Source: Octopus sinensis
Taxonomy: Eukaryota
Assembly: GCF_006345805.1 (NCBI RefSeq)
Contig: NC_043004.1
Location: 83,266,001 to 83,330,000 of the forward strand
DNA length: 64,000 nucleotides
Direction: 5' to 3'
Within the stretch, counting starts at the first letter, position 1, and every line of letters begins with the position of its first letter. The notes under the pieces are model-generated. The model did no database searches. It was not told the DNA's origin and worked only from the letters and a program-made list of their open reading frames with translations. The translations under genes were made by a program, and so were the position numbers. Shown here one piece after another: positions 9,536-60,300 of the stretch.

Positions 9536-9940
9536 AGGCGTAGGAGTGGCTGCGTGATAAGTAGCTTGATTACGAACCACATGGTTCCGAGTTCACTCCC
9601 ACTGCGTCGCACCTTGGGCGAGTGTCTTCTACTAAAGCCTCGGGCCGACCAAAGCATGTGACAGGATTTGGTAGATGGAAACTGAAAGAAGCCCATCGTA
9701 TATATGTATGTATATATAAATATATGTATGTGTGTGTATATGTTTGTGTGTCGGCGTTTGCCCCCACCCCGCTTGACAACCGATGCTGGTATGTTTACGT
9801 CCCCGTAACTTAGCGGTTCGGCAATAGAGACGGATAGGATAAGTACTAGTCTTACAAAGAATAAGTCCTCGGGTCGATTTGCTCGACTAAAGGCGGTGCT
9901 CCAGCATGGCCGCAGTCAAATGATTGAAACACGTAAAAGA
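9536..9940 (+). mobile_element. tRNA-derived SINE, family A (CORE-like centre, internal microsatellite)
   Basis: Head ggcgtaggagtggctgcgtgataagtagcttg...gagttcactccc, then gcaccttgggcgagtgtctt, an internal (TA/TG)n and tail cttgacaaccgatgctgg...gactaaaggcggtgctccagcatggcc. Many partial copies (about 975, 7245, 8725, 19390, 33890, 57060). Confidence 0.85.
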
Positions 9941-13212: not shown

Positions 13213-13278
13213 TACATGCGTGTGCGGTTAGCCGATTTTTAACATGATAAATAATTAAATATATGACTTTTTACTTAC

Positions 13279-14301
13279 TGAATCATGCAATTTTAATCCT
13301 TTTCTAATAACATATATAGTTAAAATTCCAACCAAGTGCGTTAAAATCAACACATAAGAGTCATCAATGTGTAGTTTACGATTGGCGATGTAACCGAAGA
13401 TAAGGCCGCAACTTGAAATAATGAAGGAAAGTACAAAATATCCAAAATAATTCTGGAACAAATCATTCGTCAATTCCAGTAGAGTACAGAGTTCTTGAAA
13501 ATTATCGAAAAACATGGTGAGTTCTTTACCTGTGTTCTCATCATGTGTGCTTTTGTTTTCCGTGTTATTTATTATTCCACTGCTTAGCAAATTGAATTCT
13601 TTTTCCAAAGTGTTTATAACGAAGTAGTGAATTGGTAATAATGTGAAAATAGGCATACGTTTTATGGTGCTTATTATAAAGTGAACTATTAAGCAAATAT
13701 CGCTAAGTTCACTGGTTCGAGACACGGGGTATATGAAGTGATCCATAAATGTATTACTATCCTTGGTGAAAATTGGTAAAATAAATTCAGTAATAAAGAA
13801 AATTCCAAAGAAAAGGAAAATATAAAGATATTTGTAGATTTTCTCGACAAAATCTTTTTCAGATTTAAGTTTCAGATTAGATTCAATACATTTAATTTTG
13901 GTTATTTTATTCAAAATTTTAATATTTTTCTCGGCATTGAATGCAACGCTAAGCCATATGAATATTGCTAAGAATTGCTGAACAGCGATAGATACTCTAA
14001 TATAGTATGCAGTTTTATTTTCGGTAGAATCCAATCCGATATATACGAAGATTTTCACAAATTCTGCTAACATACATATTTCTAGAATGCGACAAATTAT
14101 GTAAAAACATTTTCTCTTTAAATTATATGATTCCCAAAGAGTTAAAGAAATTTTCATATTTATAAGCTGGTGAAACCTTATAAAAAACTGAATAGAATCG
14201 TGTGTGCTTTGGGGATATTGCCCTTCTTTCTGGATATTAGCGGTCCATGAAATGGAAGATGGCTGCACGTTGTGACTGTTTAAAGAATATATTGTACACA
14301 T
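13279..14301 (-). CDS. GRL-A exon 1 (341 aa, TM1-TM6) of a gustatory-receptor-like 7TM chemoreceptor
   Basis: Stop-free 1-kb ORF in very AT-rich DNA with six hydrophobic segments and the Gr-like intracellular pattern FQELCTLLELTNDLF. The ORF-track tail VSKKSYI* is read-through of the donor TCA|gtaagt at 13278. The first ATG is at 14301 (the track start at 14313 is TTG). Confidence 0.85.
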
Positions 14302-14593
14302 TTTATTCAGCAATATTTCTGATAATATATTTCATAAATAAAATGTATTGTGCAAATATGTATACTTTTGATAAGAAATAAAACAAGTTTTCTTTCTCAT
14401 TAGGTGCATTTAATTATTTTGAATATTTAGGCGCTTCTTTCTGAATGAAACTGCTTTTTATAGATAATATATCAACTGATATGCGCCCTTCTTATATCTC
14501 GTGCATTATTTTTTCATGCGTTCGAATGTCGTCTCTAAAATAACACAAATGACGCCGTAAAGTAGAGAATAATTGATGCTAGCTAATTAATTT

Positions 14594-17302: not shown

Positions 17303-17771
17303 GAGTGAGCGAGCAGAGCATGCCATCAAAGTGACACTGGGGTAAAATATACGAAGCCCAGTATGCCCATCATGACTACCCGTACCCGTGATAAGGGTAC
17401 ACCAGGCACATGCATCACAACCATATGTGCGCGACATGGTGATCTCATATCAAGATAAACAGACACATGACCTTGCAGGTGGAGCCCAGTTAGAATTTTT
17501 CTTCAGATCGAGTAACCCATCCCGCTCAAAAGGGTCCCTGAATAGGGTGTTTAAGGACGTTGAAACGAAACACCCATGTTTCCAAAGGTGAATTATCCAA
17601 CCCCAAAGAATCCCTCTCAACCACATGGCTATGATGCTCCCCCACTACTACTTCTGCTCGTGATCAGAGATGCACATATCGTCAGCCACTAAGGGACATG
17701 CTCACTGGTTAAGGTCAAACAACTGACAAGCAAATCTGTGGTATTGAGCAGAATATTTGCTGTAGCCCATC

Positions 17772-17776
<5 letters not shown>
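17303..17776 (-). mobile_element. ~470-bp non-coding interspersed element associated with (TAA)n arrays, copy 1
   Basis: Closely similar to 53609-54075 in the opposite orientation. Both copies end in ...cactc followed by (AAT)n. Confidence 0.8.
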
Positions 17777-17815
<39 letters not shown>

Positions 17816-17837
17816 GTTATCATCATCATCATCATCA

Positions 17838-17891
<54 letters not shown>

Positions 17892-17947
17892 CATCATCAT
17901 CATCATTATTATTATTATTATTATCATCATCATCATCATTATCATCA

Positions 17948-18038
<91 letters not shown>

Positions 18039-18145
18039 ATTATTATTATCATCATCATCATCATCATCATCATCGTCATCATTATTATTATTATTATATT
18101 ATTATTATTATTATTATTATATTATCATCATCATCATCATCATCA

Positions 18146-18182
<37 letters not shown>

Positions 18183-18194
18183 TTATCATTATCA

Positions 18195-18263
<69 letters not shown>

Positions 18264-18275
18264 TACTACTATTAC

Positions 18276-18311
<36 letters not shown>

Positions 18312-18323
18312 TACTACTATTAC

Positions 18324-18377
<54 letters not shown>

Positions 18378-18480
18378 ATATTATTATTATTATATTATTA
18401 TTATTATTATTATTACTATTACTATTACTATTACTATTACTATTATTATATTATTATTATTATCATTATTATCATTATTA

Positions 18481-18542
<62 letters not shown>
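17777..18542. repeat. ~765-bp compound (TTA)n/(TCA)n/(CTA)n microsatellite
   Basis: Direct inspection; source of the poly-L/I/Y/H ORFs. Confidence 0.95.
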
Positions 18543-18545
<3 letters not shown>

Positions 18546-18680
18546 TAGTTTTATTTTTATAGCGTGCTTTCACTTCACTACCGAGCGCAGCTCTGTGTGC
18601 CTTAGGTATGTGCTGTGATTTGTTGTGATGCTCTGATGGTTATTGTATGGAAAGTGTTCTGCGTAGGATGTGTGCAGTGC
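18543..18680 (-). mobile_element. 5'-truncated 3' end of the R4/Dong-type LINE
   Basis: Near-identical reverse complement of 48927-49064 (TAHILRRTLSIQ* plus 3' UTR), with (TTA)n on both sides. Confidence 0.9.
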
Positions 18681-22914: not shown

Positions 22915-23340
22915 TATACTCTTTTTTTTACTCTTTTACTTGTTTCAGTCGTTTGACTGCGGCTATGCTGGAGCACCACCTTTAGTCGAGCAAATCGACC
23001 CCGGGACTTATTCTTTGTAAGCCCAGTACTTATTCTATCGGTCTCTTTTTGCCGAACCGCTAGGTGACAGGGACGTAAACACACCAGCATCGGTTGTCAA
23101 GCAATGCTAGGGGGACAAACACACATACACAAACACTCACACACATACACACACATATATATATATACATATATACGACAGGCTTCTTTCAGTTTCCGTC
23201 TACCAAATCCACTCACAAGGCATTAGTCGGCCCGGAGCTATAGCAGAAGACACTTGCCCAGGATGCCACGCAGTGGGACTGAACCCGGAACCATGTGGTT
23301 GGTTAGCAAGCTACTTACCACACAGCCACTCCTGCGCCTA
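22915..23340 (-). mobile_element. Full SINE family A copy abutting Helitron 1
   Basis: Tail, internal microsatellite and head all present on the minus strand. Confidence 0.85.
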
Positions 23341-23342: not shown

Positions 23343-26300
23343 TCTATATATATAAACGGCAGTTTGTCTGTCTGTGTGTCTGTCAGGTTATACCCTCACC
23401 CTGACCACAGCTTTCAACCGATTCTGATGAAACTTGACACACATAGCCCAATGTCATAATTCAAAATTAACGCAGCGAAAATTTTGAAATGTTCCCCCAG
23501 TTCTGAAAAAAATTGATAAATTCGACATGGGGTCGAGAATCTATAAGCTTTTTATATTCAACACATTTTCTTTTGTAGTTTTCGCAACTTGCAATCGATA
23601 TTCACCAAACTCATGGTGAAGCTTAATGTTACCCTAAGAAACTTAATTCTGATGTTAGTTTTCCATGCAATACCTTACCATCAGAAAAAATCGATAAAAT
23701 CATGCCATTTTGGGAAATCGCGTTCAAATTCAAGATGACATATTTTCGACAATATCTTTCACAAATTGGCAGGACTTTTTTTAAAAAATTCACAGCGAGC
23801 ATCATGCCTGCTCAAAGGACTCTATGACCCTTTTATTCCAAATCATATGTGGCACACATAGAAAACCGATTTGTGTATTAAACACAAAACACAGACTGTC
23901 TAGGGGACGCAACTCGACTTTTTAACTCTCTTACACTCCCAAATAACTATCAAACAGCTATCGATAATTCAACCCAAACAATTCCTACCAAGAAGAAATT
24001 ACATTCGAAACTTTACCCCCAACACCGCCACTTCTGCTAATAGCTGCTGCTGCCGCAAGTTATTCGAATGCTTTTTTTGTTTAAACTTTCTCTATAACTA
24101 CCACCCCAAACGTTTTACCTTCAATTTCTGACGTACCCTAAGGGTCCTCGGACGCTACTTGCAAACTCTTGGTTTATTATAAGCCGCTTTTGTCGTGTGC
24201 ACCAAAAAACCTTTTCCATTCGCTTGTTCAGTTTGGTCACTTTTGACTTTTTCGTTGTTGTCACTCACATTGCTGTCCGCTTTCTTGCCGTTTTTGTACA
24301 TTTTCATAAATTTTGGGATACTTACCGACGTGTTCCTTTTTATTACACCTTTGCCAAACACATTGCTATCCACCTAAATGCCACCCAAGAAGAGAAGGAC
24401 GCTCCTCAGTCCTCGGACGACCAAAACATCGGCTGCTAGGGCTACAAGGGCATGCGAAACCCAAGAGGAAACCGCCTTGCGCCTCTCGCAAAAAGCTTTC
24501 CGTTCTGCCGCTGCTCAGGCATCTGAAACTACTAGCGACCGTTCTACCCGACTTGCAAGGGCCACAGGGTCAATGACAATTGTATGCCAGTTTTGCAAAG
24601 CCAAGAAATGACCCGGAGAGTCACCTGGTTTGTGCTGCTCTGGTGGCAAAGTGGACCTGCCACCGCAAAGACTTTCTTCTCCGTCTCCAAACCATGCTTC
24701 AGGATATCAACAGGTACGTCTGCTGCTAGAGGTATGCCTTGGACAGTGCTCCGTCTCCAAACTTCACCGTTGTCATTGATACCGATAAACGACCCCACAG
24801 GGAGCACGAACGCCGTTTCAACGCACCTGCGTGCAACGAAATTGCCGCAGTCATACACGGAGGGCAACACAACAGCCGTGACATAATCATCTCCTCCCGT
24901 GGTAACAGCCTACGCAGGATCAGCGAGACTCACAGATCTTATGACGCGCTTCAGTATCCATTGCTTTTCCCTTATGGGGAAGACGGCAACCACTTCGGAA
25001 TTCCTTTACGGCAGCCCTCCAATCAAACTACTGCGGCATCAAAGACGGTTTCCTGCAGGGCGTTCTACTCATACCGGTTCATGTTCAGGGAGGGTGAGTT
25101 CAACTTATTGCCCCGTTGTCGTCAGCTATTCAACCAGTTCACCGTCGACATGGCCGCCAAAATGGCGGAAAGGCTGCTATACATTAAACTTTATCAGACC
25201 AAACTTCGCTCCGATTCCTACATTCATCTCCGTGACGGCTTGCAACAAGAAAATGACCCTCGCAACATCGGCAAGCCATGCATTCTACCCTCCACCTTCA
25301 CGGGAGGACCGCGATATATGCGTGAAAGGACCCAAGACGCCTTGACCTACGTGCGCATTTACGGCCGGCCGGACCTCTTTATCACCTACACGTGCAATCC
25401 CAACTGCGACGAAATTACTCGCGATCTCCTCCCGGATCAGAATCACACCCATCGACACGACGTCTTTGCTAGGGATTTCCGTCTGAATTTGGGCAAAATG
25501 ATGGATTTGATAGTTAAGGGTCAGATTTTCGGGCATGTCAGGGGCCACATGCTTTCGGTCGAGGGGCAAAAGAGGGGCTTGCCACATGCTCACGTCTTAA
25601 TTTGGCTAATTAATAAAATCGAGACTAATGACATTGACTAATTCATTTCCGCCGAGATTCCTGACCCCGATGAGGACCCCGAACTGTACGAAATTGTCCT
25701 CAAAACCATGGTACACGGGCCTTGTGGACCAAATTACGCCAACACACCATGCTGCAAAATCGGATTAGCCTGCTCAAAGAGATTCCCTAAACGGTTCACT
25801 TTGGAGACTCAAACAGGCGGCGATGGGTATCCGCTGTACAAACGAAGGAGTCCAGCCAATGGAGGCCGCACGATTACGGTTGGGCGACATCAAGTGGACA
25901 ACAGCTACATTGTCCCCTACTGTCCTCTCCTGTCGAAGATATTCAAAGCCCACGTCAACGTTGAGTCCTGCAGCTCCATCAGGTCAATACAATATGTCTG
26001 CAAATATATCAACAAGGGCAGCGATGCTGCCATGTTCGGCATCCAGAGGACCACCCGTCACGACGAAGTGTCCAACTACTTGGCAGGCCGGTACCTCAGC
26101 AGCAATGAAGCGTTTTGGCGAATTTACGGCTTCCCGCTCGATCAGAGACACCCGGCTGTAGTGCAGCTTGCTGTACACTTGGAAAATGGACAGCGGATTT
26201 ACTTCACAGAGCAAACTGCTGCGCAGGTAGCCACCAACCCTAAAGACACAACGTTGACCGGTTTCTTCAAATTATGCCAACGTGATGACTTCGCTCGAAC

Positions 26301-28451
26301 GCTTTTGTACCCCCAGGTCCCATCGTACTTCGTGTGGTATAACAACACCTGAGTTCGACGGAAATCCGGCAAAAACGTCGAAGGCTTCTCACGTGTCAAG
26401 CTTGACTCCTGCCTGGGTCGAGTTTACAACATCCCGCCAAACCAGCTAGAATGCTTCTACCTCCGTCTCCTTCTACATGAGGTCACTGGTCCAACAGGTT
26501 TCGGCAATATACGTACCGTCAATGGATTCTGTGCGACACCTTCAGGGAAGCATGTATGAGACTTGGCCTTCTAGAGGATGACTCCCAGTGGGACACCACT
26601 ATGGCAGAGGGCGCTTTACTGCAAACGCCTTCGGCCCTACGACATCTTTTCGCAATCCTTCTTCAAAAGTGTCAGCTTAATGACCCACTAAGTCTCTGGA
26701 TGAAATACAGGGATGACATGTCGCAGGACCTCTTACGTACGGCTCAGCAACACTGCCCTTCCGTCGAGATCACGTTCAACAACTTCATTTACAATTTTGC
26801 GCTTATTCAACTCGAAGACGCTGTCATCGATATGGGTGGCCCTGCTTTAACGGAGTACGGCCTTACACCACCCACACGTGAACACGCCAATGTTATGTCT
26901 GCTGAATTGTTACGCGAAACTTCCTACTGCATTGAGGAACTGCACCAGTACGTCCAAGATAATGAACCACGACTGCTTCCAGACCAGCGCATAGCCTACA
27001 ACACCATCTGTCAGACAGCAACATGAGCGAATTTACTTCTTTGACGCACCTGGCGGCACTGGCAAAACCTTCGTGACGAAACTAATTCTGGTGGAGGTCA
27101 GACGCAACACGGACATTGCCCTGGCTGTAGCTTCCTCTGGTATCGCGGCCACGTTGCTTCCGGGTGGCAGAACCTCCCACTCTGCCTTCAGACTCCCGCT
27201 CGATCTGGCAAAGTCCGAGTCACCTATCTGCAACATCGTCAAGACCTCAGAACAGGCCGACATTCTGCGAAGATGAAAACTCATCTTATGGGACGAGTGC
27301 AATATAGCACACAAAGGTGCCCTTGAGGCACTGGACAGGTCCCTGCAAGACATCAGAGACTCTATGGCCCCATGAGAGGATTGACTTTACTTCTTTCTGG
27401 AGACTTCAGGCAGACTCTACTTGTTATTCCAAAAGGAACCCGTGCCGATGCTGTACGCGCGTGTCTTAAGTCGTCAGCTCTTTGGGCACATGTGCGGCCC
27501 TTGCACCTCCAAATTAACATGCGCGCGCAGTTGAGTGGTGACAGCGGATCCGCTGCATTCTCCAGGGATCTTTTATTGCTCGGTGAAAATAGGATGCCGG
27601 CTGATGCGGATGGCTGCGTTCAATTGGACTCACTTTGCACCACTGTCGACACCCCTGCTAGCTTCCGGGATGCTGTCTTCCACGACCTACAAAACAATTT
27701 ACGCGACCTAAAATGGCTGGCAGGCAGAGCTATTTCGCACCCAAAAATACAACCGTTATCTCCATCAATATCCAGCTACTTGAAGCTATTCCTGGTGATG
27801 TCCAGGTCTACAAATCTATAGATAGGACAGCAGACCCCGCCGAGCTTGCCGATTATCCTGTTGAATTCCTGAATTCACTTGAACCGCCAGGCCTGCCGCC
27901 ACACATCCTGAAGTTAAAAGTCGGTGCGCCCATTATGCTCATCAGGAATATGGTTCCACCTAAACAGGGCAACGGCACACGTCTGGTTGTGAAGCATTTG
28001 GCACCACATTTAATAACGGTCACAATACTTACCGGTTGTGGGAAGGGAGAGGATGTCTTCATTCCACGCATGCACCTTCAACCGTCGGGCGCTGACCTAC
28101 CAATCTACTTCAGGCGTTCTCAGTTTCCTGTTAAACTCTGCTTCGCAATGTCCATCAATAATTCCCAAGGCGAAACGCTACAAGTCGCTGGGTTACATTT
28201 GGGCGAACAGTGCTTCGCCACGGTCAACTCTACGTGGGCTGTTCACGCGTTGGGAGGGACAATGATGTTTTCATGTTTTCGCACAAAGGGACAGCTAGGA
28301 ACATCGTATACACAGAAGTATTCGAGTGAAGAGAAGACATTGCAACCTACACTTGCGCCTTCGTTCCCTAGAGGGAAAGGACTAGATTGGGATTAGTCGT
28401 TGCCTACTAGGGGCGTTTACATACCCGGGCAACGCCGGGCTATGCTGCTAG
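23343..28451 (+). mobile_element. Helitron copy 1 (5.1 kb, internally deleted)
   Basis: A|TC 5' end at 23343. 3' hairpin cccgggcaacgccggg plus CTAG|T at 28448-28451. Colinear with copy 2. Confidence 0.95.
24378..28329 (+). pseudogene. Rep/PIF1-helicase pseudogene of Helitron 1
   Basis: Rep motifs GRPDLFITYTCNP, QKRGLPHAH and KYINKG; helicase motifs DAPGGTGKT, WDEC and FAMSINNSQG. Several frameshifts and stops. Confidence 0.95.
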
Positions 28452-35418: not shown

Positions 35419-35482
<64 letters not shown>

Positions 35483-35652
35483 TGTAGTAGTAGCAGCAGC
35501 AGCACTGTTCCAGTAGTATAAATAAAGAAAAAGCATAAAAGCAGTAGTTGTTTTATGCGTTTAGAAATATTCGTATAAGGAAAGAAATCAATTTTTTTAA
35601 AATAAAAATACTGTTCAAACGAAAGCGGAAGCCGAAGAAATAGAAGGAAAGA

Positions 35653-35660
35653 TATATAAG
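35653..35660 (+). promoter_or_regulatory. Candidate TATA box (tatataag) of the secreted-protein gene
   Basis: About 70 nt upstream of the ATG at 35728, in non-microsatellite context. Confidence 0.4.
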
Positions 35661-35727
35661 GGTGTGTTACTATAACAGTGGGTTACTTGAAGTTATATGT
35701 TATAGTAGAACTCCACCTTTGGTGAAG

Positions 35728-36714
35728 ATGATGAAAGTAAACATCCCTTGCTTGATGGGTTATATTTTAGCAATTATCGTGCTGGTCGTCGTTGTTAGAG
35801 GTAAAAAGGACACTGAAATTCCCAAAAAGTCGCAAATTCAGAAATGTATGGTGTTGGCTCGGAAGCGAAGACTTAAAGGTCTCGATAAGGATGAAGGAAA
35901 AAGATTAGTTTGTAAACCGTCATATAACCTGACCATTGATTGTATAATAAAAAACAGCTTAAAGTCCAAGCATCCGTTAGACATTTCAGTGCGAAATTCC
36001 ACAAGTATGGCACGTTGGAAAGAATCTAACAAGTATCTGTGTAACCAGTATCGCCGTGTAAATGAAGACAAGGAGCCATGCGCAAGCAGTTCAATGGAAT
36101 GTATGAAGATTTTAAACATGCATATTTATACCTGGTGTCGCCCGGATACTCGCTGCTTCTATGAAAAAATACATAATTGCAGTGAATTCGTCGCTATAAT
36201 TTGGGCGAAATACGTCCTTTTGGGCAAAAGCAACGTTTGTATTGTATCGGATCAATATTTTCAGTTATATCCATTATATGGACCTGAATTAAAATGTTAT
36301 CCGATTACCAATGTAGATGTTCACGCGACATTGGATAGGGTATACAGAGATTTCTGCGCACGTTTTCAGTTTCGCGGAACCCTTGAATGTATACGTGATG
36401 AAGTTGGGAAATTATCTTCTGCGGATTTAGATGATAATAAATCTGATTATATCCTTAAAGCTGTGAAATTTGCACGTGGCCGGAATAGTCTCTGTAAGAA
36501 TCTGAAGGATTTGCCGGCAAAAACTTGCAATATTATTCAAGAAGATATTACAAAAACTTGCCTGAAGAAGCTGTATTACACACATCGGAAACAAGAAAAA
36601 TCTTTATCGGATTCGGTAGAAATATATGCAAAATGCATACAAAAGCAATACAAGCAGTGTGACGTGAACTTAGCTCGACTTATTGGAAAAAACATTCGAT
36701 CATATAACAAGTAG
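35728..36714 (+). CDS. Intronless secreted cysteine-rich protein (328 aa), family unknown
   Basis: Signal peptide MMKVNIPCLMGYILAIIVLVVVVRG, 18 Cys in the mature chain, an RKRR site, and a 987-nt intact ORF. The track start at 35662 is GTG. Confidence 0.85.
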   Translation: MMKVNIPCLMGYILAIIVLVVVVRGKKDTEIPKKSQIQKCMVLARKRRLKGLDKDEGKRLVCKPSYNLTIDCIIKNSLKSKHPLDISVRNSTSMARWKESNKYLCNQYRRVNEDKEPCASSSMECMKILNMHIYTWCRPDTRCFYEKIHNCSEFVAIIWAKYVLLGKSNVCIVSDQYFQLYPLYGPELKCYPITNVDVHATLDRVYRDFCARFQFRGTLECIRDEVGKLSSADLDDNKSDYILKAVKFARGRNSLCKNLKDLPAKTCNIIQEDITKTCLKKLYYTHRKQEKSLSDSVEIYAKCIQKQYKQCDVNLARLIGKNIRSYNK

Positions 36715-36995
36715 CATTGACCGACGAATAACCACTGTTGAGTAATATTGTTTCAGACGTCTATCGGGAATATATTTACCGACTGCATCTATGTGGATTA
36801 TATGTTATCTTGTAGTAGTATACTTACATGCAATGACACTTTTAACTGCTTAAAGCGCGGAAAGCAAAGTAGGTAATTTAAAATAGGCTTTATACACGCA
36901 GGCACACACGTACAAACACGCACACACACATATACAAATTTACATACATACATAAATATATGTCACATTTATATGAATTTACATTTACATATATA

Positions 36996-37108
<113 letters not shown>

Positions 37109-37837
37109 TATTTTATATATATATATATATAATATACATATATATACACACACACACACACACATATATATATACATACATACATATGCACATACAACAT
37201 ATGAAACAATTTATACCATTTTATTATATTTATACTGTTATATTTTGTTATGTTTTATGTACGTGCCCTCACTAATATTGTTATAACTTCTTTCAATTGA
37301 ATTATATTTTGTAAAGAGGAATTTTGCTTTCAAAAAAAAAAAGAAAAAATTAAAAATATCGAAAAATAAGAATATGAATATCAATTGAACGAATAAAATA
37401 TTAAGAAAATGCAAAAAATATGAAGCATAATGTATTCTTTAATTATTTCTAATATTATATTGCTTGAATGTACGTGAGTTGATTGCGACTACTCTTAAAA
37501 CGAGCAATTTTACGCGCGTGTGTAGCAAAAACTTTCAGGTAAGTATACATTTATTATTTTACCGCAGTTTAAAGTTCCAGTTATTTCCTATCGAGTTTAT
37601 TTTTTATTAACAGTTTAACCTCTGGTCATATATATATTGTTTATTTTTTTAGAAAAATTGGTTTATAATATTTGTAAACTTATGGAATTCAATTTCTTCT
37701 TCACAAAACACAACTATGCTAGCATGCGTGTATTCATATATGTATGTATATTTACATGTGCATATGTGCTTGAATGTACGTCTGTGTGTATATATATATA
37801 TGTTGTATATGCTTGTATTCCCACTTATCTCGTTTTC

Positions 37838-37882: not shown

Positions 37883-38345
37883 ATGCTTAACCACCTCCCA
37901 AAAACAGTCAATGAGAAAACCCTACTAGTATCCTTCGACGTAATTAACCTTTATCCAAACATCCCTCACACCCTAGGAATAGACGCGATCACTTTCTGGC
38001 TAAATAACTACTCCTTTGAACTCCCAACTCGCATAAATAAAGAACTTATAACAGGACTTAGATTTATTTTAGAAAACAATTACTTTATTTTTGACAATAA
38101 TTTCTACAGACAAATAACGGGAACAGCGATGGGCACACGTACTGCACCTTCTTTTGCCAACCTAGTGATGGGATACCTCGAGAAAATACTCTACCAGAAA
38201 ACACTCCTCGAGAAATATGGAAACACCTTCTCCACCTATTTCCAGAACAACTGGAAAAGATACCTCGACGACTGTTTTATCCTCTGGGATAAAAGTATAG
38301 AGAAACTTGAGGAATTTAAAATACTATTAAATGGAATAAATGATA
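37883..38345 (+). pseudogene. Penelope-like reverse transcriptase fragment
   Basis: LVSFDVINLYPNIP...ILENNYFIFDNNFYRQITGTAMGTRTAPSFANLVMG...WKRYLDDCF. Confidence 0.9.
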
Positions 38346-38399
38346 ATATGTTATTTTGGGTATGTATGTATGTTGTATATATATAGCTATACATATATA

Positions 38400-40330: not shown

Positions 40331-41230
40331 CACTGGTCAACAAAATGAAACTTGGTTTAATCATCAGAGTTGCTGATTGACATTTCTAGATTAATTTTTG
40401 ATGCTGATTACGAATCTGAATTCCGATTTCCCCTATCAGGTCACATTTTCATGCTAATGATGCCTGCTTTTTTAACTTATAGGATACGTAAAGCATATCT
40501 ATATAAAGTTTACTGAATACAAGATACGATAATGTCATGGCTTTTTATTGTACAAAATTAAAATCTTTGGGATTTGGATATTCTATGATGTTTTGTCTCA
40601 GATCCATCCCTATATAACATCCAACAGCAGTCAGCAAACATTCCTGCATTCCAAAATCCTTGATATCGTTGTCCAATCGATGCAATATCTTGATGAAAGC
40701 GTTATCCTTGCTCATCAGACACTGCTCCAAGGCTTTCTGCATAAACGTCTAAATATGAATCAAGGAAATGGACTTTTAGTGGCATCTGACAGCCCATTGC
40801 AGCGTAGGAGTCTAGAAGACATATCACTCCATTTCTAAACTCTAGAGATCTCGTGTTGCCTAGGAAATTTTCACAGAGCCATTTGAAGGATTCCCAGGCT
40901 TTAAGCTTAATTTCATCCAGTGCTGTGAGGAAGTGCTTGTCCTTCAGGAGTTCTTTTATCTGCGGACCTATGAAGACATCCTCCTTCAGTTTTGCCTCGG
41001 TGATGTTTCGAAATTTGGCGTTCAAATATTCAAAACTTTTGGAGCCTTTCCCGGCAAGTGTCTTCACGAATTGTTTCGTGAGGACAAACTTTATGCGAAA
41101 AGGTGGAAGAAGAACATTTTCTGGGTTTAAAAGCGGTTCACTCTGGGCGCTAGAAACTCCCGGCTCACATGATTTTCGCAAACGCCACTCTGAGTTAGAT
41201 AGGATACAAAATAGAGAGTGAGAATATAGA
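40331..41230 (-). mobile_element. Chapaev3-like transposase remnant with a terminal CACTG end
   Basis: PLLNPENVLLPPFRIK...FIGPQIKELL...AWESFK...FLGN...GCQMPLKVHFLDSYLD..ESLGAVSDEQG; terminus cactggtcaacaaa at about 40331. Confidence 0.7.
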
Positions 41231-41307
41231 TGTAAGATATGTAGGGATATTGAAGTTGTAGATCCATTTTTTAGACAGAATGGTATATATGTAAGATTCA
41301 CATACCT

Positions 41308-41384
<77 letters not shown>

Positions 41385-42719
41385 CGAGAGATATTATATA
41401 TAAATATATATATATGAGATATTTCAAGTTATATGGCAAGGTAGTGTTAATCCAGTGTCTATAGCACAAGGTACTTTGCAGCGGGACCGAACCAGAAATC
41501 TTGTGGTGGCAACACGTACTTCTTAATCACACAGCCATGCCAGCCCCTATATGAAGATTTTCCTGGCGTAAACTGCCCATGAAACGATTTTGTCAGAAGT
41601 TTCATAATTATAGACACGATCCTCTGCATTTTTATTGTTGACACGGTGTATAAAACTATTTATTTTTTGATAAGGTATTTGCATATTTTATGATCTAGAA
41701 TTCAATGATAACAGATTTATTAGGACAAGTGTTAGCTCCTCCTTCACCTGATCGACCTCATCATTTGTCGGTATTAGAAAGAACTAAGAAGATTTCCGTG
41801 TCTTTCCATGATGACTTTCATTTTTATGTGTTTGATGATCGATGGTGAGGTGTGAATCTAGCCTCGTGAATATTCCATTCCCTTAAACATTCAAAAAAAT
41901 CTTTTTCTTGCAAATTGAGTGTCAAGATGATTATGTACAAAGCTTAGAACAGAGAAAAATAAAGGATAAGGAGAAGCAGCGTTGTATAACGCCCTGAATA
42001 ATTGCATTCTCCTGTGCAAATGAGAAAATATAATGCGCAAATTTATCCAGTGTTCTCAAAGTGCAAACGCTACCCATTTTCTAAATGGTTATTAAATGAT
42101 AGTCACTGTTAACTGTGTGAGTTGGTCCAGCGCATTGCAATATTGATGAAGGATTAAACTCACATATATATCACACAACCTAATTTTAACCTTAACATAC
42201 TATCTTAATCAATTATTATAATTTGGTGTACATGTCGGGCAAGTATTTTCAGTTGTGTTGAAACTAAAACAATGACAGCGTGAAAACTATTCAAAAACAC
42301 AAGTATAAACCATTCTAAAAGACAAATTCTACTAACTTCACTTAAATTTTCACTACTTGGTGTCAAAATCTTCGTCGCACTAACTGCGACCTCGTAATGG
42401 ACCTGATTTCAGAGCACGGTATGTTACAGACTTTGTGTAATTTTAAGTAGTTAATATTTGTCTTCCACGATGTATTACCAACGTAACAACGATGCCAGGC
42501 TTTGTAATTTAAAAGGAATCCTATGAAAAAAAACCTATTGCATTTTTTTCCGTTTAGATTAAAGGTATGCTCTCTGTTTTCAAAAGTTTATTTTATCGAT
42601 CCTGGACAGATGCAAAGTAAAGATGGCCTCTAGAGGTTTTAAACTCAAGTTACAAAGAACCGGAAAGAAATGCAGCATGACAGTTTAGAAATTTTGCTTT
42701 CATTTGAACTGCACTCTTT

Positions 42720-43790
<1,071 letters not shown>

Positions 43791-45140: not shown

Positions 45141-48100
45141 ATATAAATTAAATATTACCGGTATTATTCAACCCAAGAATAACAATCGGAAAGTACGTAC
45201 TGTAAACTTACAACATAAAATGTACGAAAAACTACACGTGCAAAACAATGTGACAACTGAAATGAACGGACCGGTACCCTACGAAAATGACGACCTTCAA
45301 AATAATGGGTCGGACGTTGTCCCTCACGTCCCGAAAATAAAATCAAAAAGGCATACATTTCAATCCTACACGCTTACTTTACAGCAGTGCTCTACACAAA
45401 GAGCGAAAACACAAGAACATATACATATAAAATATGGAAGCAAAATAACATAAATAAAGACCTGGATACAGCAATGAACCGTATAATCTAGCTAACGTGG
45501 GAAGATATATTCTCAACGCAAAAAATATTCAGGAATAGAAATAGAACGTTTAAAAGAAAAAATACATCAGGAAAAAAATGTAGATAGAAGCAACACAACA
45601 ATGCCAAATAATATAAACACTGAAACAGTAAAACACGAAGACAAACGTAACATTTCCAACAAAAACGATGTAAGCAAAAAACAACAAAACCAGACCGTAA
45701 TGATGCATAATAATACACGACAAACAGCAAGCCAAAACACGACAAACAAACATACGAATGAGAAAGAAAGCGACACAAATCTAAAACCTGGAAACAACGA
45801 AGGGGACCCTAATGATTATGATACTATAAAAAGTAGAATAATCAAAGAACTGAAAACCACAGTGCTCAAAATGGAACACCGACCATAACTCCCAAAAACA
45901 AAGTAGACAAAACAACAACATCAATTATAAACAGCATAAAGCTAGCCGTCACGGAACTAATAGCCACTGAAACAAAAAGCGATATCACTGAGCTAAATGA
46001 TTTAGTATACGCAGCAGCCACTGCCCACAAAAGAAGCTAGATACTCATTCAAACTCATCCAAACAGGAGTACCACCACCCAAACAAACCCTGTGGATAAA
46101 TAACATCCAAAACTAAATTTAAAAAATGAGAAAAGATCTGTCGATTATTAATGAAATCAGTAGACAATCAACGCTACTAAGCAACAAAAAGAAAAGAAAA
46201 ATACTCCGAAATACAACATCAAAATACTCCGAATATACAAATACTCCGCAAATATAACATCACAGAAAAAGATTTACCTGAGATAAAAGAAAAGCTAATG
46301 CAAGATATCCTTGCCAAAGCACAAAGGATCTGCCGGTACGAGAAACGCCAACGTTTCTTTGAACAAAACAAACAGTTCAACTCCAACCACAAAAAGTTCT
46401 ACCAAGAACTTGGCAAAAATAAAATAGAAATCACTGTAGCACCAACGGCAGAAGAAGTGGAAGAATTATGGAGAGAAATATGGTCGGCGAACGAACAACC
46501 CAAAAAGGAGTATTAAAACAACAAACTCAGCATCTGAGCAACTTTGGACCCCCATAACAACTGAAGAGGTCACTCAAGCACTGCAAAGACTACGCAACTG
46601 GAAGGCACCTGGGCATGACAAGATCCCCAAATTCTGGTTGAAATATCTAACAGGAATGCACAAAAAGCTGGCTGAAAACTTTAACAACATACTAGCAGAG
46701 CCAGAGACAATGCCTGAATGGCTCATGAAGGGGAAAACCATCTTAATTCTCAAATCAAATGAGACAGCAAAACCAGAAAACTACAGACCTATACCTGTCT
46801 CCCTACAATGTACAAAGCATTTTACTGCAGTAATATCACAAAGATTGAAGAAGCACCTGGACGAAAAAAACCTGTTTCCAGAGGAGCTGAAAGGATTCCG
46901 CAAAGGCTCATATGGCTGTAAAGATCAACTAATGATCAATAAAGCCATAACTGAAGACAGCCACAGAAAGAAGAAAGGCCTCAATATGGCCTGGATCGAC
47001 CACAAAATGGCGTTTGATAGCATCCCCCACACATGGATCCTCGAAATACTAGTCATTAACAAAGTTGCGCCAACAATTATAAAATACATAGGACACTCTA
47101 TGAATAAATGGCTGACAGTGCTACAGCTCCAAACAAAAGAGGGACTGCTGAAAACCAAATTCATCCTCATTAGAAGAGGAATATTCCAGGGAGACACGCT
47201 CTCCACTCCTTTTCTGCTTGGCACTCTCACCTCTATCGGATATGCTAAATAGAACTGGATGCGGATATAAATGTTACGGCAAAACGATCAGCCACCTTTT
47301 ATATATGGATGACCTAAAACTATTCGCCACAAATGACAAACAGCTGGAAACACTACTACAGGCAGTTCATGGATTTACCAAAGAAATAGATATGAAATTT
47401 GGATTAGAAAAATGCGCCAAAGTAACCCTGAAAAGAGGAAAACTAGTTAAGATTAGCAACATCACACTAGATAAAACCAATGAAATAAAAGAATTAGACC
47501 AAAGCCAAACTTACAAATACTTAAAAATCCATGAACAAGATAAGACACAATACACACAAATGAAAGAGAAAAGAAACAAAGAATATTACAGACGAGTTAT
47601 ATCAATACTGAAAACAGAGCTCAATGCTAAAACAAGATAATAGGTATCAACACTTTAGCCGTCCCAGTTATAAGTTACAGCTACAATATCCTTAACTGGA
47701 CACTAAATGAACTGACCAAAATAGATAGGAAAACAAGAAAAATAATGACAGGATCTAGGATGCATCACCCAAAATCTGTCTTTGAAAGGCTATATATACA
47801 ACGTATAGAAGGTGTTAAATGCCTTTCACAGCTGGAAAACTACTATAAAATAACCACCATAGGACTGCAAAAATATCTACTTCAGAAGGAAGAAAAACTG
47901 ATGCAAGTAGCGGCAAAACACGAGCAAAACAGAAAACAGTTCTCAGTATTTAAGGAAGCTGACAAATACAAACAAGAAATCTTACCACCTAACAAATTTG
48001 AAGAAGAAGAAGAAGAAGAAGAAGAAGAAGAAGAAGAAGAAGAAGAAGAGGAGAGAAGAAGAAGAAGGAGAAGAGGAAGAAGAAGAGAAGAAGAAGAAGA

Positions 48101-51783: not shown

Positions 51784-52737
51784 CGAGGGACGTTCAATAA
51801 GTAATGCCTCTGACCCACTTGCAGTTGTTTGATCTAGCTGAAATTTTGCATGTGCAATTATTCATATAGATTAAGTGGCAAATTACAGCTCTGAACTAAT
51901 TGTGGTTTCTGATTTACAGGTGTTTGAACTGAGTCAAGTGTGAAATGGAGGCTGTTGAGTGTCGAGCAGTGATCCGGTTTTTGTATTTGAAAGGACGCAC
52001 ACCACGGGAGACTTTTGATGAAATGAAAGTAACTTATGGTGATGATGTCCCATCATATGACCTTGTAAAACGATGGCATCGTGGATTCAAACATGGTTGG
52101 AACACTGTGGAAACAGCTCCCAGATCTGGTCGCCCCACCCCTTCTGCCATTGATGAGGCATCTGTCCGTCAAGTTGAGGCTGCCATTTTGGAAGATCGAC
52201 GCATAACTATTCGCCAAATAACCCATGAGGTCAAGATTAGTACCGGGTCTGTGGAAACTATCATTCATGACCATTTGCATATGCAAAAGGTGTCTGCCAG
52301 ATGGATTCCCAGGTTGCTCACACCTTTCCAGAAGCAAGAACGCGTCGAGTGCTTGAGGATGAATTTGGAGATGTGCCAAGAAGATGAGTCAAAATTTTTC
52401 AAAAGACTGATTACACAGGATGAAACCTGGGTCCATCACTATGATCCAGAGACCAAAGCCCAGTCAATGCAGTGGAATCACCGTGACTCACATCCTCCAA
52501 AGAAAGCAAGGGTGCAGCCCTCCGCTGGCAAGGTCATGCTCACAGTCTTCTGGGACCAGGACGGAGTAGTGATGACAGATTTCCTGACAAAGGGTCTTCA
52601 CAGCTGCATCAAACGATGGGAGAAATGCGGAGCTCTGGGTGGTTCCTATGTAGAAAAAGACTAATAACTTTGCCAAGTTTCGTTGCTGTACTGCTATGGG
52701 AAGTGGGTCAGGGTCATTACTTATTGAACGCCCCTCG
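51784..52737 (+). mobile_element. Internally deleted mariner (irritans-like), 954 bp, with intact inverted repeats and TA duplication
   Basis: ta|cgagggacgttcaataagtaatg ... cattacttattgaacgcccctcg|ta. Confidence 0.95.
51945..52664 (+). CDS. In-frame-deleted mariner transposase (239 aa)
   Basis: Retains the HTH region, WIPRLL, ITQDETWVHHYDPE and SAGKVMLTVFWD, then jumps to GLHSCIKRWEKC. The second and third catalytic Asp regions are missing. Confidence 0.8.
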   Translation: MEAVECRAVIRFLYLKGRTPRETFDEMKVTYGDDVPSYDLVKRWHRGFKHGWNTVETAPRSGRPTPSAIDEASVRQVEAAILEDRRITIRQITHEVKISTGSVETIIHDHLHMQKVSARWIPRLLTPFQKQERVECLRMNLEMCQEDESKFFKRLITQDETWVHHYDPETKAQSMQWNHRDSHPPKKARVQPSAGKVMLTVFWDQDGVVMTDFLTKGLHSCIKRWEKCGALGGSYVEKD

Positions 52738-57303: not shown

Positions 57304-60300
57304 TCTCTCTCTATATAAACGGCAGTTTGTCTGTCTGTGTGTCTGTGTGTCTGTCAGGTTGCACCCACACCCTGACCATGGCTTTCAACCGATTCTCATG
57401 AAACTTGAGACACACATAGCCCAATGTCATAATTCAAAACTAACGCAGCGAAAATTCTGAAAAGTTCCTCCAGTTCTGAAATAAATTGATAAATTCGACA
57501 TGGGGTCGAGAATCTAGGCTTTTTATATGCAACACATTTTCTGTTGTAGTTTTCGCAACTTGCAATCGATATTCACCAAACTCATGGTGAAGCCTAATGT
57601 TAACCTAAGAAACTTAATTCTGACGTTAGTTTTCCATGCGATACCTTACCATCAGAAAAAAATCAATAAAATCATGCCATTTTGGGAAATCGCGTTCAAA
57701 TTCAAGATGTCACATGTTCGACAATATCTTTTACAAATTGGCAGGAATTTTTTTTAAATTCCCAGCGAGCATCATGTCTGCTCCACCCTTTTTATTCCAA
57801 TAGGATACTTTATTACTGGGAAAAATCGGTTAATGAAATCATATGTGGCACACATAGCAAACCGATTTGTGTATTAAACACAAAACACAGACTGTCTAGG
57901 GGACGCAACTCGACCTTTTTAACTCTCTTACACTCCCAAATTACTATCAAACAGCTATCGATAATTCAACCCAACCAATTCCTATCTGGAAGAAATTACA
58001 TTCGAGACTTTACCCCCAACACCACCACTCTGCTAATAGCTGCTGCAGCAGCAAGTTATTCGAATATTTTTTTTGTTTAAACTTTCTCTATAACTACCAC
58101 CCCAAACGTTTTACCTTCAATTTTTGACGTCCCCTAAGGGTCATCGGACGCTACTTGCAAACTCTTGGATTATTATAAGCCACTTTTGTCGTGTGCACCA
58201 AAAAACCTTTTCCATTCGTTTGTTCAGTTTGGTCACTTTTGACTTTTTCGTTGTTGTCACTCAATTGCTACCCGCTTTTTTGCCGTTTTTGTACATTTTT
58301 ATACATTTTGGGATACTTACCCCACGTGTTCCTTTTTATTGCACCTTTGCCAAACACATTGCTATCCACCAAAATGCCACCCAAGAAGGGAAGGACACTC
58401 CTCAGCCCTCGGACGGCCAAGGCATCGGCTGCTAGGGCTAGAAGGCACGCAAGACCCAAGAGGAAACCGCCTTGCGCCTCTCGCAAAAAACTTCCCGTTC
58501 AGCCGCTGCTCAGGCATCTGAAACTACTAGCGACCGTTCTAGCCGACTTGCAAGGGCCGCAGCATACATATCTTCCCTCCGCTCGAGGTTGACGAAAGAG
58601 CAACAGTCCAGCCAAAACATGCGGGCTTCTTCCTGTGCTTCCATCCGCAGAGCTCGCGAGAACCCCAAACAAAGGGCCATGGGGAATGCGGCTAACGCCA
58701 CTAGCACCGCCAGGACACGATCTGTCGAAACCTCACAGCAGAGGAGAACTCGCCAAGCTGCTGCCGCCGCAAACACAGCCATGGCCCGATCTGCCGAAAC
58801 ACCTCAACAGAGGAGAGATCGCCAAGCTGCTAACGCCGCAAACACAGCCACGGCTCGATCTCCCATAACTCCATACCAACGAACTATTCGGACATCCAGA
58901 GATGCCATTAACACTGCTTCTGCTAAGGCTTCAGAGGGTGCTGAGGCGAGAGCTGAAAGGCATTCAAGGGATGCCACTGCTACCGCTGTCGCACGCGCAT
59001 CTCAATCTGCTGAGGCACGGCGCACTCGACTTGAGAGTATCAACCAACGTCGGGATATCATTCGTGGTGGTGTACGTATCCCTGCCCCCGTTTTCTGGTC
59101 GTCACTAGCATTCAACTACGACGCCACAATTAACTTCTCCTTGCGTGACGACATCAAGATAGGGTCAATGACAATTGTATGCCAGTTTTGTAAAAGCCAA
59201 GAAATGGCACGGAGAGCCACCTGGGTTTTGCTGCTCTGGTGGCAAAGTGGACCTGCCACCCCTACGGGAACCACCTCAAACACTGAAGGATCTCGCGGCG
59301 GGTTTAACCCCCGAATCGTCACAATTCCTTGAAATCATTCGAAAATACAACAGCTCAATCCAAATGACCTCTTTCGGTGCCAAAATTCCTCCTAGAGAAG
59401 GCTGGATGCCTACTTTTAAAGTGCAGAGACAGGTCTACAATCTTATTGGGTCACTTCTGCCAGACGAAATTCAGCAGTCTTCTTGCCTCCAAATCTACTT
59501 CATTGCCGACTACAACCAGCAGGTTGATGCACGCCTTGGAATAATACCGGGTACATGCTATGTTCCCCGCAAATACGTTCTTCTCCGTCTCTAAACCATG
59601 CTTCATGATATCAACAGCTACGTCTGCAGCTTCAGGTATGCCTTGGACACTGCTCCGTCTCCAAACTTCACCGTTGTCATTGATGCTGATAAACAACCCC
59701 ACAGGGAGCACGAACGCCGTTTCAACGCACCTGCGTGCAACGAAATTGCCGCAGTCTTACACAGAGAGCAACACAACAGCCGTGACATAATCATCTCCTC
59801 CCGTGGTAACAGCCTAGACAGGATCAGCGAGACTCACAGATCTTAAGACGCGCTTCAGTATCCATTGCTTTTCCCTTATGGGGAAGACGGCAACCACTTC
59901 GGAATTCCTTTACGGCAGCCCTCCAATCAAACTACTGCGGCATCAAAGACGGTTTCCTGCAGGGCGTTCTACTCATACCGGTTCATGGTCAGGGAGGGTA
60001 AGTTCAACTTATTGCCCCGTTGTCGTCAAATATTCAACCAGTTCGCCGTCGACATGGCCGCGAAAATGGAATCGGAAAGGCTGCTATACCTTAAACTTAA
60101 TCAGACCAAACTTCGCTCCGACTCCTACATTCATCTCCGTGACGGCTTGCAACGAGAAAATGACCCTCGCAACATCGGCAAGCCATGCATTCTACCCTCC
60201 ACCTTCACGGGAGGACCGCGATATATGCGTGAAAGGACCCAAGACACCTTGACCTACGTGCGCATTTACGGCCGGCCGGACCTCTTTATCACCTACACGT

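What the first reader, a model, noticed from the sequence alone, without database searches (positions are those of the whole stretch)
35728..36714. Orphan intronless secreted protein with 18 cysteines and a two-domain repeat beside the GRL cluster
Seen: a signal peptide, a TATA-like box, a lysine-rich mature chain with an even 18 Cys, and a furin-type RKRR site. Two similar modules are present: VC-x9-CII...YLC and FC-x10-CIR...SLC. The ORF is intact amid decayed repeats. Inference: a helical, disulfide-stapled secreted protein, loosely reminiscent of DUF19-type repeats. Its position in a chemoreceptor locus (possibly nested antisense in GRL-B intron 1) raises a ligand-carrier role analogous to odorant-binding proteins; a venom, mucus or reproductive secretion role is equally possible. 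The lack of introns may indicate a retrogene.
Basis: partly seen in the sequence, partly recalled or inferred. Interest (0 to 1): 0.7.

Follow-up and report, generated by a model that had tools for sequence, protein, structure and literature searches.

The report
Unnamed octopod cysteine-rich surface protein, tail lost
The ORF is a real, selectively maintained gene for an all-helical extracellular protein with nine predicted disulfides, from an unnamed family found in octopods and in unidentified organisms; most relatives carry a tail that looks like a lipid (GPI) membrane anchor, and this copy has lost it, so it is probably secreted.

Summary
Window 35728-36714 (+) is an uninterrupted 328-codon ORF with an N-terminal hydrophobic signal, 18 cysteines in the mature chain, RKRR at residues 45-48 and a TATATAA 75 nt upstream. 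It is not an orphan. Orthologues exist in an unidentified octopod-like sample (73% identity) and in Argonauta hians (52%), with all 18 cysteines invariant and dN/dS 0.36. An exhaustive profile search found about five further subfamilies, two of them seen as polyadenylated mRNAs. No member matches any Pfam model. An AF2 model (pLDDT 79.8, all-alpha) matches nothing in the PDB or BFVD. The two-module repeat is supported (hhalign score 25.8 against a shuffle null of 11 +/- 2). Most relatives end in a GPI-signal-like hydrophobic tail. Here a TAG stop and about 34 extra bases cut the still-recognisable tail frame (36773-36853) off the ORF, so a soluble product is predicted, as in the naturally tail-less P0003/P0004 subfamily. 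The links to DUF19, a retrogene origin and a GRL/chemoreceptor locus are not supported. The furin site is not conserved and has a 21% chance expectation. Function is inferred only: an extracellular binding scaffold. Interest is moderate to low.

The parts
35653..35659 (+). TATA-like box (TATATAA), 75 nt upstream of the ATG. It lies inside a block (about 35630-35700) conserved with the L001 orthologue and partly with Argonauta.
35728..36714 (+). Single-exon coding sequence: 328 aa plus a TAG stop. It is the octopod orthologue of Argonauta hians Ahia01_000311300.
   Evidence: dN/dS 0.36 against L001
35728..35802 (+). N-terminal signal segment, residues 1-25. The hydrophobic core is residues 6-23 and the likely cleavage is after VRG. 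The core is long enough that an uncleaved signal anchor cannot be excluded.
   Evidence: Hydropathy; it aligns with canonical signal peptides of relatives. No signal-peptide predictor was available.
35860..35871 (+). RKRR (residues 45-48), a furin-type motif in a variable basic linker between C40 and C62. It is not conserved.
35905..36312 (+). Module 1 (about residues 60-195): five helices and ten cysteines (62, 72, 105, 118, 125, 137, 143, 151, 171, 190).
36259..36300 (+). Most conserved segment of the family, FQLxPxYGPELxCY (residues 178-191). It is a non-helical loop at the junction of the modules. P182, G185, C190 and Y191 are invariant.
36313..36711 (+). Module 2 (residues 196-328): five or six helices, seven cysteines (210, 221, 256, 267, 278, 303, 311), mostly pLDDT > 90.
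36711..36756 (+). 46-nt GT...AG segment that spans the stop codon. Removing it would join the ORF in frame to the tail and give 359 aa. It has a weak donor and no counterpart in the orthologues. It is more likely part of a disrupted linker than an intron.
36773..36853 (+). Cryptic tail frame, out of frame with the ORF: YLPTASMWIICYLVVVYLHAMTLLTA*. It is homologous to the hydrophobic, GPI-signal-like C-terminus of P0001 (HLPTASTWIIWGLQVAYIYLMIFLTVSI*).

Best explanation
**What it is**
- The ORF is a genuine, selectively maintained single-exon gene. It belongs to an undescribed family of extracellular glycoproteins present in octopods and in further, unidentified organisms.

**Family architecture** (shown by sequence comparison and modelling)
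- A cleavable signal peptide comes first.
- It is followed by an all-alpha ectodomain of about 300 aa.
- The ectodomain consists of two homologous five-helix modules held by an 18-cysteine (nine-disulfide) framework.
- An invariant inter-module loop, FQLxPxYGPELxCY, joins the modules.
- In most members a C-terminal stretch of small residues, a spacer and an uncharged hydrophobic tail follows. This is the layout of a GPI-attachment signal.

**What happened in this copy**
- The two orthologues still have the tail.
- Here the linker has acquired a TAG stop plus about 34 extra bases, which throw the still-recognisable tail out of frame.
- The predicted product is therefore a soluble, secreted, basic (pI 9.4), N-glycosylated version of a protein that was ancestrally membrane-tethered.
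- A tail-less state also occurs naturally in another subfamily (P0003/P0004).

**How it probably works** (inferred, not shown)
- It is a rigid, disulfide-stapled helical binding scaffold acting at the cell surface or in the extracellular space, binding a protein, glycan or other anionic partner.
- Loss of the tail would convert a tethered binder or co-receptor into a diffusible one.
For: - **Real ORF:** the 356-codon open frame compares with a shuffled maximum of 180.
- **Orthologues:** P0001 is 73% identical (E 2e-158) and Argonauta P0002 is 52% identical (E 1e-102). All 18 mature cysteines are invariant among the three.
- **Selection:** dN/dS is 0.36, with dS 0.42, and differences by codon position are 50/37/84. 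The relative-rate test shows no significant acceleration in this lineage: 27 against 17 unique changes, p = 0.13.
- **Promoter:** the TATA box and proximal blocks are conserved.
- **Family size:** 11 representatives reach E < 1e-3 among 1.84 billion proteins, all 290-355 aa long. The 18-Cys framework is kept in most of them.
- **Disulfide hints:** C125 and C143 are lost together, as are C267 and C311, which indicates disulfide partners.
- **GPI-like tails:** they are present in all sampled subfamilies except P0003/P0004.
- **Expression of the family:** tail-less P0003 and tailed P0022 are both polyadenylated mRNAs with an ATTAAA signal. P0022 is seen in more than 100 sequencing runs.
- **Fold:** the AF2 model has pLDDT 79.8 and pTM 0.76 and is all-alpha. 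The internal repeat is supported.
- **Tail remnant:** it lies out of frame downstream of the stop.
- **Secretory route:** sequons N67 and N90 are conserved.
Against: - There is no transcript or protein evidence for this gene in the window's own species. L001 looks like genomic DNA, since it runs into the same flanking microsatellites.
- GPI anchoring and signal-peptide cleavage are inferred from sequence layout only. No predictor was available and nothing has been tested experimentally.
- The N-terminal hydrophobic core is long (about 18 residues) and could act as a signal anchor.
- The truncation could instead be an assembly error, or be bypassed by splicing of the 46-nt GT...AG segment.
- The binding function is pure inference. 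No homologue has a known function, and the model coordinates could not be inspected for pockets.
Confidence: 0.6

Rival explanations
1. The gene still makes the tailed, membrane-anchored protein. Either the 46-nt GT...AG segment (36711-36756) is spliced out as a mini-intron to give a 359-aa protein, or the stop and the extra bases are an assembly or sequencing error.
For: - Removing 36711-36756 joins the ORF in frame to a 26-residue hydrophobic tail homologous to that of P0001.
- The acceptor side (TTGTTTCAG) looks good.
- The tail frame is still open and scores like the family's tails (maximum 12-residue hydropathy 2.51, no charged residue in the last 18).
Against: - The donor GTAGCA is weak, and by general knowledge 46 nt is very short for an animal intron.
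- Both orthologues read straight through with no intron at this point.
- Part of the segment is homologous to their coding linker.
- The tail region is the most diverged part of the locus: 70% nucleotide identity, against 83% for the CDS and 77-78% for the flanks.
Confidence: 0.12
2. The gene is a young pseudogene or is on its way to loss. Losing the anchoring signal disabled the protein, and the upstream ORF is intact only because the lesion is recent.
For: - There are two lesions, a stop and a frame-shifting length change, in the linker.
- No product of this exact gene is present in a collection of about 15 billion proteins.
- There is a slight excess of window-specific substitutions, 27 against 17.
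Against: - The excess is not significant (p = 0.13).
- All 18 cysteines, both conserved sequons, the invariant loop and the promoter block are intact.
- dN/dS is 0.36, though that is averaged over both lineages.
- Tail-less members are expressed as mRNA in another subfamily, so a soluble form is viable.
Confidence: 0.17
3. One reading: an odorant-binding-protein-like ligand carrier that works with neighbouring GRL chemoreceptors, possibly nested in a GRL intron.
For: - A long multi-helix ORF does exist at 13258-14313 on the minus strand. It has 5 TM-like segments and about 8 long predicted helices.
- The target protein is small-ish, helical, disulfide-rich and secreted, as insect OBPs are.
Against: - That ORF cannot be identified as a GRL by Pfam, motif, homologue search or fold model (pLDDT 40).
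- It is single, 21 kb away and separated from the target by a Helitron.
- No receptor-like exons flank the target.
- The Argonauta orthologue has no such neighbour within 10 kb.
- Most family members look membrane-anchored, unlike soluble carriers.
- There is no match to OBP families in Pfam.
Confidence: 0.04
4. A very divergent relative of the GDNF-receptor/GAS1 domain superfamily: GPI-anchored tandem five-helix cysteine-rich modules acting as a co-receptor.
For: - The architecture resembles it: signal peptide, two all-alpha modules of about five helices with about five and four disulfides, a GPI-type tail and a single coding exon.
- By general knowledge, GAS1 is GPI-anchored, has two GFR-alpha-like domains and is intronless.
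Against: - None of 16 members hits PF02351 or any other Pfam model at E <= 10.
- The family profile finds no PDB sequence.
- Foldseek finds no GFR-alpha structure. The best PDB hit of any kind has E 2.8 and TM <= 0.23.
- From memory, the cysteine spacing differs.
Confidence: 0.07

Closest known systems
Argonauta hians hypothetical proteins Ahia01_000311300 (orthologue, P0002) and Ahia01_000864600 (GAB1605823.1, paralogue P0012)
   Same: Same family. The orthologue is 52% identical and the paralogue about 18-24%. They share the 18-Cys framework (16 Cys in P0012), the FQLxPxYGPELxCY-type loop, a signal peptide and a single coding exon.
   Different: Both keep the hydrophobic C-terminal tail that the window ORF has lost. 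Both are unnamed and uncharacterised.
GAS1 / GFR-alpha receptors (GDNF/GAS1 domain, PF02351)
   Same: They have a similar build: GPI-anchored extracellular proteins made of tandem all-alpha, roughly five-helix, disulfide-rich modules. GAS1 also has a single coding exon (general knowledge).
   Different: No HMM, profile or fold match was found, and the cysteine spacing differs. The resemblance is one of architecture only.
   Same: Cysteine-rich secreted proteins with repeated modules.
   Different: No Pfam hit for any of the 16 members, even at E <= 10.
Insect odorant-binding proteins, and plant GPI-anchored lipid-transfer proteins (LTPG)
   Same: Small all-alpha, disulfide-stapled extracellular binders. 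LTPGs also occur in GPI-anchored and soluble forms (general knowledge).
   Different: Those domains are about 100-120 aa with 6-8 Cys, whereas this is a two-module 300-aa ectodomain with 18 Cys. No sequence or fold match was found. The analogy is functional only and is untested.

Membership tests
Unnamed octopod family (window ORF, P0001-P0012) | Significant full-length sequence similarity to other members | tested here: met
   E values of 2e-158 and 1e-102 to the orthologues. The profile recovers 11 representatives at E < 1e-3.
Unnamed octopod family (window ORF, P0001-P0012) | 18-cysteine framework and the invariant FQLxPxYGPELxCY loop | tested here: met
   All 18 Cys are present, along with P182, G185, C190 and Y191.
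Unnamed octopod family (window ORF, P0001-P0012) | N-terminal signal peptide | tested here: inconclusive
   There is a strong hydrophobic N-terminus that aligns with canonical signal peptides. The core is long, however, and no dedicated predictor was available.
Unnamed octopod family (window ORF, P0001-P0012) | C-terminal GPI-signal-like hydrophobic tail (in most members) | tested here: not met
   The ORF stops before the tail, and a homologous tail frame survives out of frame at 36773-36853. The P0003/P0004 subfamily also lacks a tail.
GDNF/GAS1 domain proteins (PF02351) | Match to the domain HMM | tested here: not met
   No Pfam hit for any of the 16 members at E <= 10.
GDNF/GAS1 domain proteins (PF02351) | Fold similarity to solved GFR-alpha structures | tested here: not met
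   The best Foldseek PDB hit has E 2.8 and no GFR-alpha chain is listed. Caveat: Foldseek is less sensitive for all-alpha folds.
DUF19 (PF01579) | Match to the domain HMM | tested here: not met
Insect-type odorant-binding proteins (PBP_GOBP) | HMM match; a single domain of about 120 aa with six Cys | tested here: not met
   No Pfam hit. The architecture is 300 aa with two modules and 18 Cys.
Furin-processed proprotein | R-x-K/R-R site conserved in position among orthologues | tested here: not met
   RKRR is present here only, with RKRK in P0001 and RIRD in Argonauta. The chance expectation is 0.21.
Processed retrogene | Intronless copy of an intron-containing parent gene | tested here: not met
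   Distant paralogues are also single coding exons in genomic DNA. The orthologous locus and promoter are conserved to Argonauta.
Processed retrogene | Poly(A) remnant and target-site duplications | not testable with these tools
   Any such event would predate the split from Argonauta (synonymous sites are saturated), so the hallmarks would have decayed.
Gustatory-receptor-like 7TM channels (the neighbouring ORF 13258-14313, not the target) | 7tm_7 / GR HMM match, the TM7 TYxxxxxQF motif, and a GR-like fold | tested here: inconclusive
   There is no Pfam hit, no motif and no homologue. The AF2 model (pLDDT 40.5) is too poor to search with. The ORF is helical and has 5 or more TM-like segments.

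The most novel reading that the evidence does not exclude
The family has a new extracellular fold, possibly restricted to cephalopods, in which the choice between a GPI-tethered and a soluble form is repeatedly switched at one short 3' linker. The switch would be by mutation between species and subfamilies, and possibly by splicing of the 46-nt GT...AG segment within this species. The same binding scaffold could then act either as a membrane co-receptor or as a diffusible decoy or carrier.
Probability: 0.1. Interest if true: 0.6.

Novelty: new variant of a known kind. Interest (0 to 1): 0.33.

Why it matters
- Cephalopod genomes contain many lineage-restricted genes of unknown function. Few of them come with a defined architecture, evidence of selection and a confident structural model.
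- This gene defines an unnamed family with no Pfam model. Its only named database entries are two 'hypothetical proteins'.
- The predicted all-helical, nine-disulfide, two-module ectodomain has no solved structural relative.
- The family has both membrane-tethered and soluble forms.
- If the architecture is confirmed, it would merit a new domain family. It would also give a tractable case of how loss of an anchoring signal turns a surface protein into a secreted one.
- The finding does not support a new chemosensory carrier system.

Tried and rejected
- **Pfam:** scans of the ORF and of all 16 family members at E <= 10 found nothing relevant.
- **PDB by sequence:** single-sequence and profile searches gave only noise, E >= 0.3.
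- **Foldseek:** the AF2 model has no match in the PDB (best E 2.8) or in the viral BFVD library (best E 1.4). A viral or transposon envelope-like origin is also rejected, because the gene is single-copy in the window and sits at an orthologous locus with conserved flanks.
- **Annotated collection:** the family profile search added no named members.
- **Taxonomy of unnamed members:**
  - Literature searches on the run accessions found nothing.
  - Cluster look-ups of a gene neighbouring the family copies on L003 failed.
  - L003 shares no transposons with the window.
  - The family's spread beyond octopods is therefore unknown.
- **Prior description:** a literature search for such a family found nothing relevant.
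- **The 'GRL' claim:** Pfam, PDB, motif, paralogue, homologue and single-sequence AF2 tests on ORF 13258-14313 were all negative or uninformative. I did not run Foldseek on that model because pLDDT 40 would give meaningless hits.
- **Origin of the extra 34 nt:** no convincing local duplication source was found.
- **Cryptic tail in P0003:** I looked for one after the stop of the tail-less P0003 transcript, to test for a conserved splice switch, and found none.

Full report
**1. The observation**

Window 35728-36714 (+) is an uninterrupted ORF of 328 codons ending in TAG.
- The open frame spans 356 codons. The longest frame in 200 shuffles of the surrounding 20 kb reached 180 codons (mean 115). 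With the local base composition, the probability of such a run is about 1e-14.
- The protein starts with a strongly hydrophobic segment (residues 6-23) and has 19 cysteines. One is inside that segment and 18 follow it.
- It is 11.9% lysine, and the mature chain has pI 9.4.
- It carries RKRR at residues 45-48 and four N-x-S/T sequons.
- A TATATAA lies at 35653, 75 nt upstream of the ATG.
- The gene sits between microsatellites, (TAG)n at 35419-35493 and (AT)n at 36989-37146, and transposon debris.

**2. It is a gene under selection, not an orphan**

A search of 5.8 billion proteins found two relatives.
- P0001 is 73% identical and 368 aa long. It comes from a 1.5-kb contig of an unidentified sequencing run (L001).
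- P0002 is 52% identical and 367 aa long. It is a 'hypothetical protein' of the octopod Argonauta hians (L002).
- All 18 mature cysteines are invariant among the three.

Several measures point to purifying selection.
- Against L001, dS is 0.42, dN is 0.15 and dN/dS is 0.36. Differences by codon position are 50/37/84.
- Against Argonauta, synonymous sites are saturated.
- A relative-rate test with Argonauta as outgroup gives 27 window-specific against 17 L001-specific replacements (p = 0.13). This lineage is therefore not clearly accelerated.

The flanks also indicate an orthologous locus with a conserved core promoter, not a mobile element.
- The 5' flank is 77% identical to L001 and shares the TATA box. 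Short blocks (CGAAGAAAT, TTGAAGT) are conserved even in Argonauta.
- The gene has no second copy in the window.

**3. The family**

An exhaustive HMMER search of 1.84 billion representatives with the three-sequence profile found 11 proteins at E < 1e-3. All are 290-355 aa long, apart from one fragment.
- Nearly all come from unnamed short assemblies. One is a second Argonauta gene, GAB1605823.1.
- They fall into about five subfamilies that are only 18-30% identical to each other.
- In a 16-sequence alignment, twelve cysteines are invariant, along with D85, P182, G185, Y191 and Y300. Two more cysteines are nearly invariant. The segment FQLxPxYGPELxCY (residues 178-191) is the family signature.
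- Most members keep all 18 cysteines. Where cysteines are missing they go in pairs: C125 with C143 in four proteins, and C267 with C311 in two. This points to those being disulfide partners.
- Two members are certainly expressed. Contigs for P0003 and P0022 end in poly(A) preceded by ATTAAA, and P0022 recurs in more than 100 runs.
- Distant members are also encoded by one uninterrupted coding exon in genomic DNA. P0012 spans exactly 981 nt. P0027 sits on L003 next to a broken tandem copy.
- The lack of introns is therefore a family trait and says nothing about a recent retrogene.

**4. Structure and known families**

- No member matches any Pfam model, even at E <= 10.
- Neither the sequence nor the family profile matches any PDB sequence.
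- AlphaFold2 with the family alignment gives a usable model: mean pLDDT 79.8, pTM 0.76, and mostly above 90 in the C-terminal half. It is entirely alpha-helical.
- Foldseek finds nothing in the PDB (best E 2.8, TM <= 0.23) or among viral models (best E 1.4).
- I had considered GFR-alpha/GAS1, folate receptors and glypicans as look-alikes, since they are GPI-anchored, helical and cysteine-rich. None was recovered.
- The two-module idea is supported.
  - The score is 25.8, against 11.0 +/- 2.1 for 60 column shuffles and 10.6 for the reversed profile.
  - The predicted helices correspond one to one between the modules.

**5. The missing tail**

Both orthologues are about 40 residues longer than the window protein.
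- Each ends in small residues (GNS, NGS), a spacer, and an uncharged hydrophobic stretch at the extreme C-terminus.
- The same layout closes every other sampled subfamily except P0003/P0004.
- This is the standard arrangement of a GPI-attachment signal (general knowledge). No predictor was available, so GPI anchoring is an inference.

In the window the ORF stops right after the last helix.
- The DNA downstream is still homologous to L001.
- In another frame it encodes YLPTASMWIICYLVVVYLHAMTLLTA*, against HLPTASTWIIWGLQVAYIYLMIFLTVSI* in P0001.
- Between the two lies a linker with a TAG and a TGA, and about 34 more bases than in L001 (67 against 33 nt). The tail is therefore out of frame.
- The simplest reading is that this lineage lost the anchoring signal recently and now makes a soluble protein.
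- That state is viable. The P0003 subfamily ends at the same alignment column, is expressed, and has no cryptic tail.

One alternative deserves mention.
- The 46 nt at 36711-36756 begin with GT and end with a good acceptor (TTGTTTCAG). Removing them gives a 359-aa protein with the tail.
- I rate this low. The donor is weak, the segment is very short, the orthologues have no intron there, and part of the segment is homologous to their coding linker.
- An assembly error cannot be excluded with these tools.

**6. Other claims**

*The furin site.* RKRR lies in a variable basic linker between C40 and C62.
- It reads RKRK in P0001 and RIRD in Argonauta.
- Such a motif appears in 21% of shuffles of this basic chain.
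- It is not evidence of processing.

*The chemoreceptor locus.*
- The only receptor-like feature in the window is a 358-codon open frame at 13258-14331 on the minus strand. It has five or more TM-like segments.
- It has no Pfam match, no PDB match and no gustatory-receptor TM7 motif.
- It has no paralogue in the window and no homologue at all.
- A single-sequence AF2 model is too poor to use, at pLDDT 40.5.
- It lies 21 kb from the target, beyond a Helitron.
- No TM-rich exons flank the target.
- The Argonauta orthologue has only transposon fragments within 10 kb.
- The nesting and the functional link are therefore unsupported.

**7. Mechanism**

*Shown:*
- a conserved, selectively maintained secretory-pathway protein;
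- two homologous helical modules;
- an 18-cysteine framework;
- a family-wide C-terminal hydrophobic tail that this ORF has lost.

*Inferred:*
- cleavage of the signal peptide;
- nine disulfides;
- GPI anchoring of the tailed members;
- secretion of this one.

*Proposed function (low confidence):* it is a rigid extracellular binding scaffold or co-receptor-like module. Its basic surface may favour anionic partners such as sulfated glycans or mucus. In this species it is released instead of tethered. The fairly fast divergence (dN/dS 0.36, subfamilies below 30% identity) fits surface recognition proteins in general.

**8. Verdict**

It is an unnamed family with a predicted fold that has no solved relative, and with both tethered and soluble forms.
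- The specific functional ideas (OBP-like carrier for GRLs, DUF19, retrogene, furin processing) do not hold up.
- Lineage-restricted cysteine-rich secreted families are common in cephalopods, so interest is moderate to low unless expression or binding data reveal a role.
- No step had to be referred.

Noticed in passing
window 24700-28400 and 58400-63400 (+): Two Helitron-like elements stand out at about 50% GC against a background of about 35%. Their Helitron_like_N, PIF1 and Pif1_2B domains are split over several ORFs, so both copies are frameshifted.
   Followed up: partly
window 13258-14331 (-): A 358-codon open frame with five or more TM-like helices. It has no Pfam match and no homologue among 5.8 billion proteins, and a single-sequence AF2 model reaches only pLDDT 40. 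It looks like a real orphan membrane protein; the 'GRL' label could not be verified.
   Followed up: partly
window 51945-52664 (+); 37883-38386 (+); 46638-47640 (+): A Mos1/mariner transposase remnant (HTH_48 plus a partial DDE domain) and two reverse-transcriptase fragments.
   Followed up: no
window 7308-7396, 9603-9698, 23176-23288, 43625-43742; L002 2633-2743, 18608-18725, 19281-19358: A SINE-like repeat of about 90-118 bp is shared between the window and the Argonauta hians locus at 73-84% identity. It appears to be an old octopod repeat family.
   Followed up: no
L003 1250-2233 and 9977-10960: Two family genes lie in tandem about 8.7 kb apart on an unidentified genomic contig. The upstream copy is split into two ORFs (1250-1561 and 1625-2233), so it is either a pseudogene or contains a sequence error.
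   Followed up: no
window 17690-18620 (+): About 0.9 kb of trinucleotide-type simple repeats stays open in several frames and produces 240-300-codon pseudo-ORFs of poly-I/L/S/Y/H.
   Followed up: no
window 40702-41469 (-): A 255-aa ORF whose C-terminal half looks like a transposon-derived protein. It has no Pfam match.
   Followed up: no
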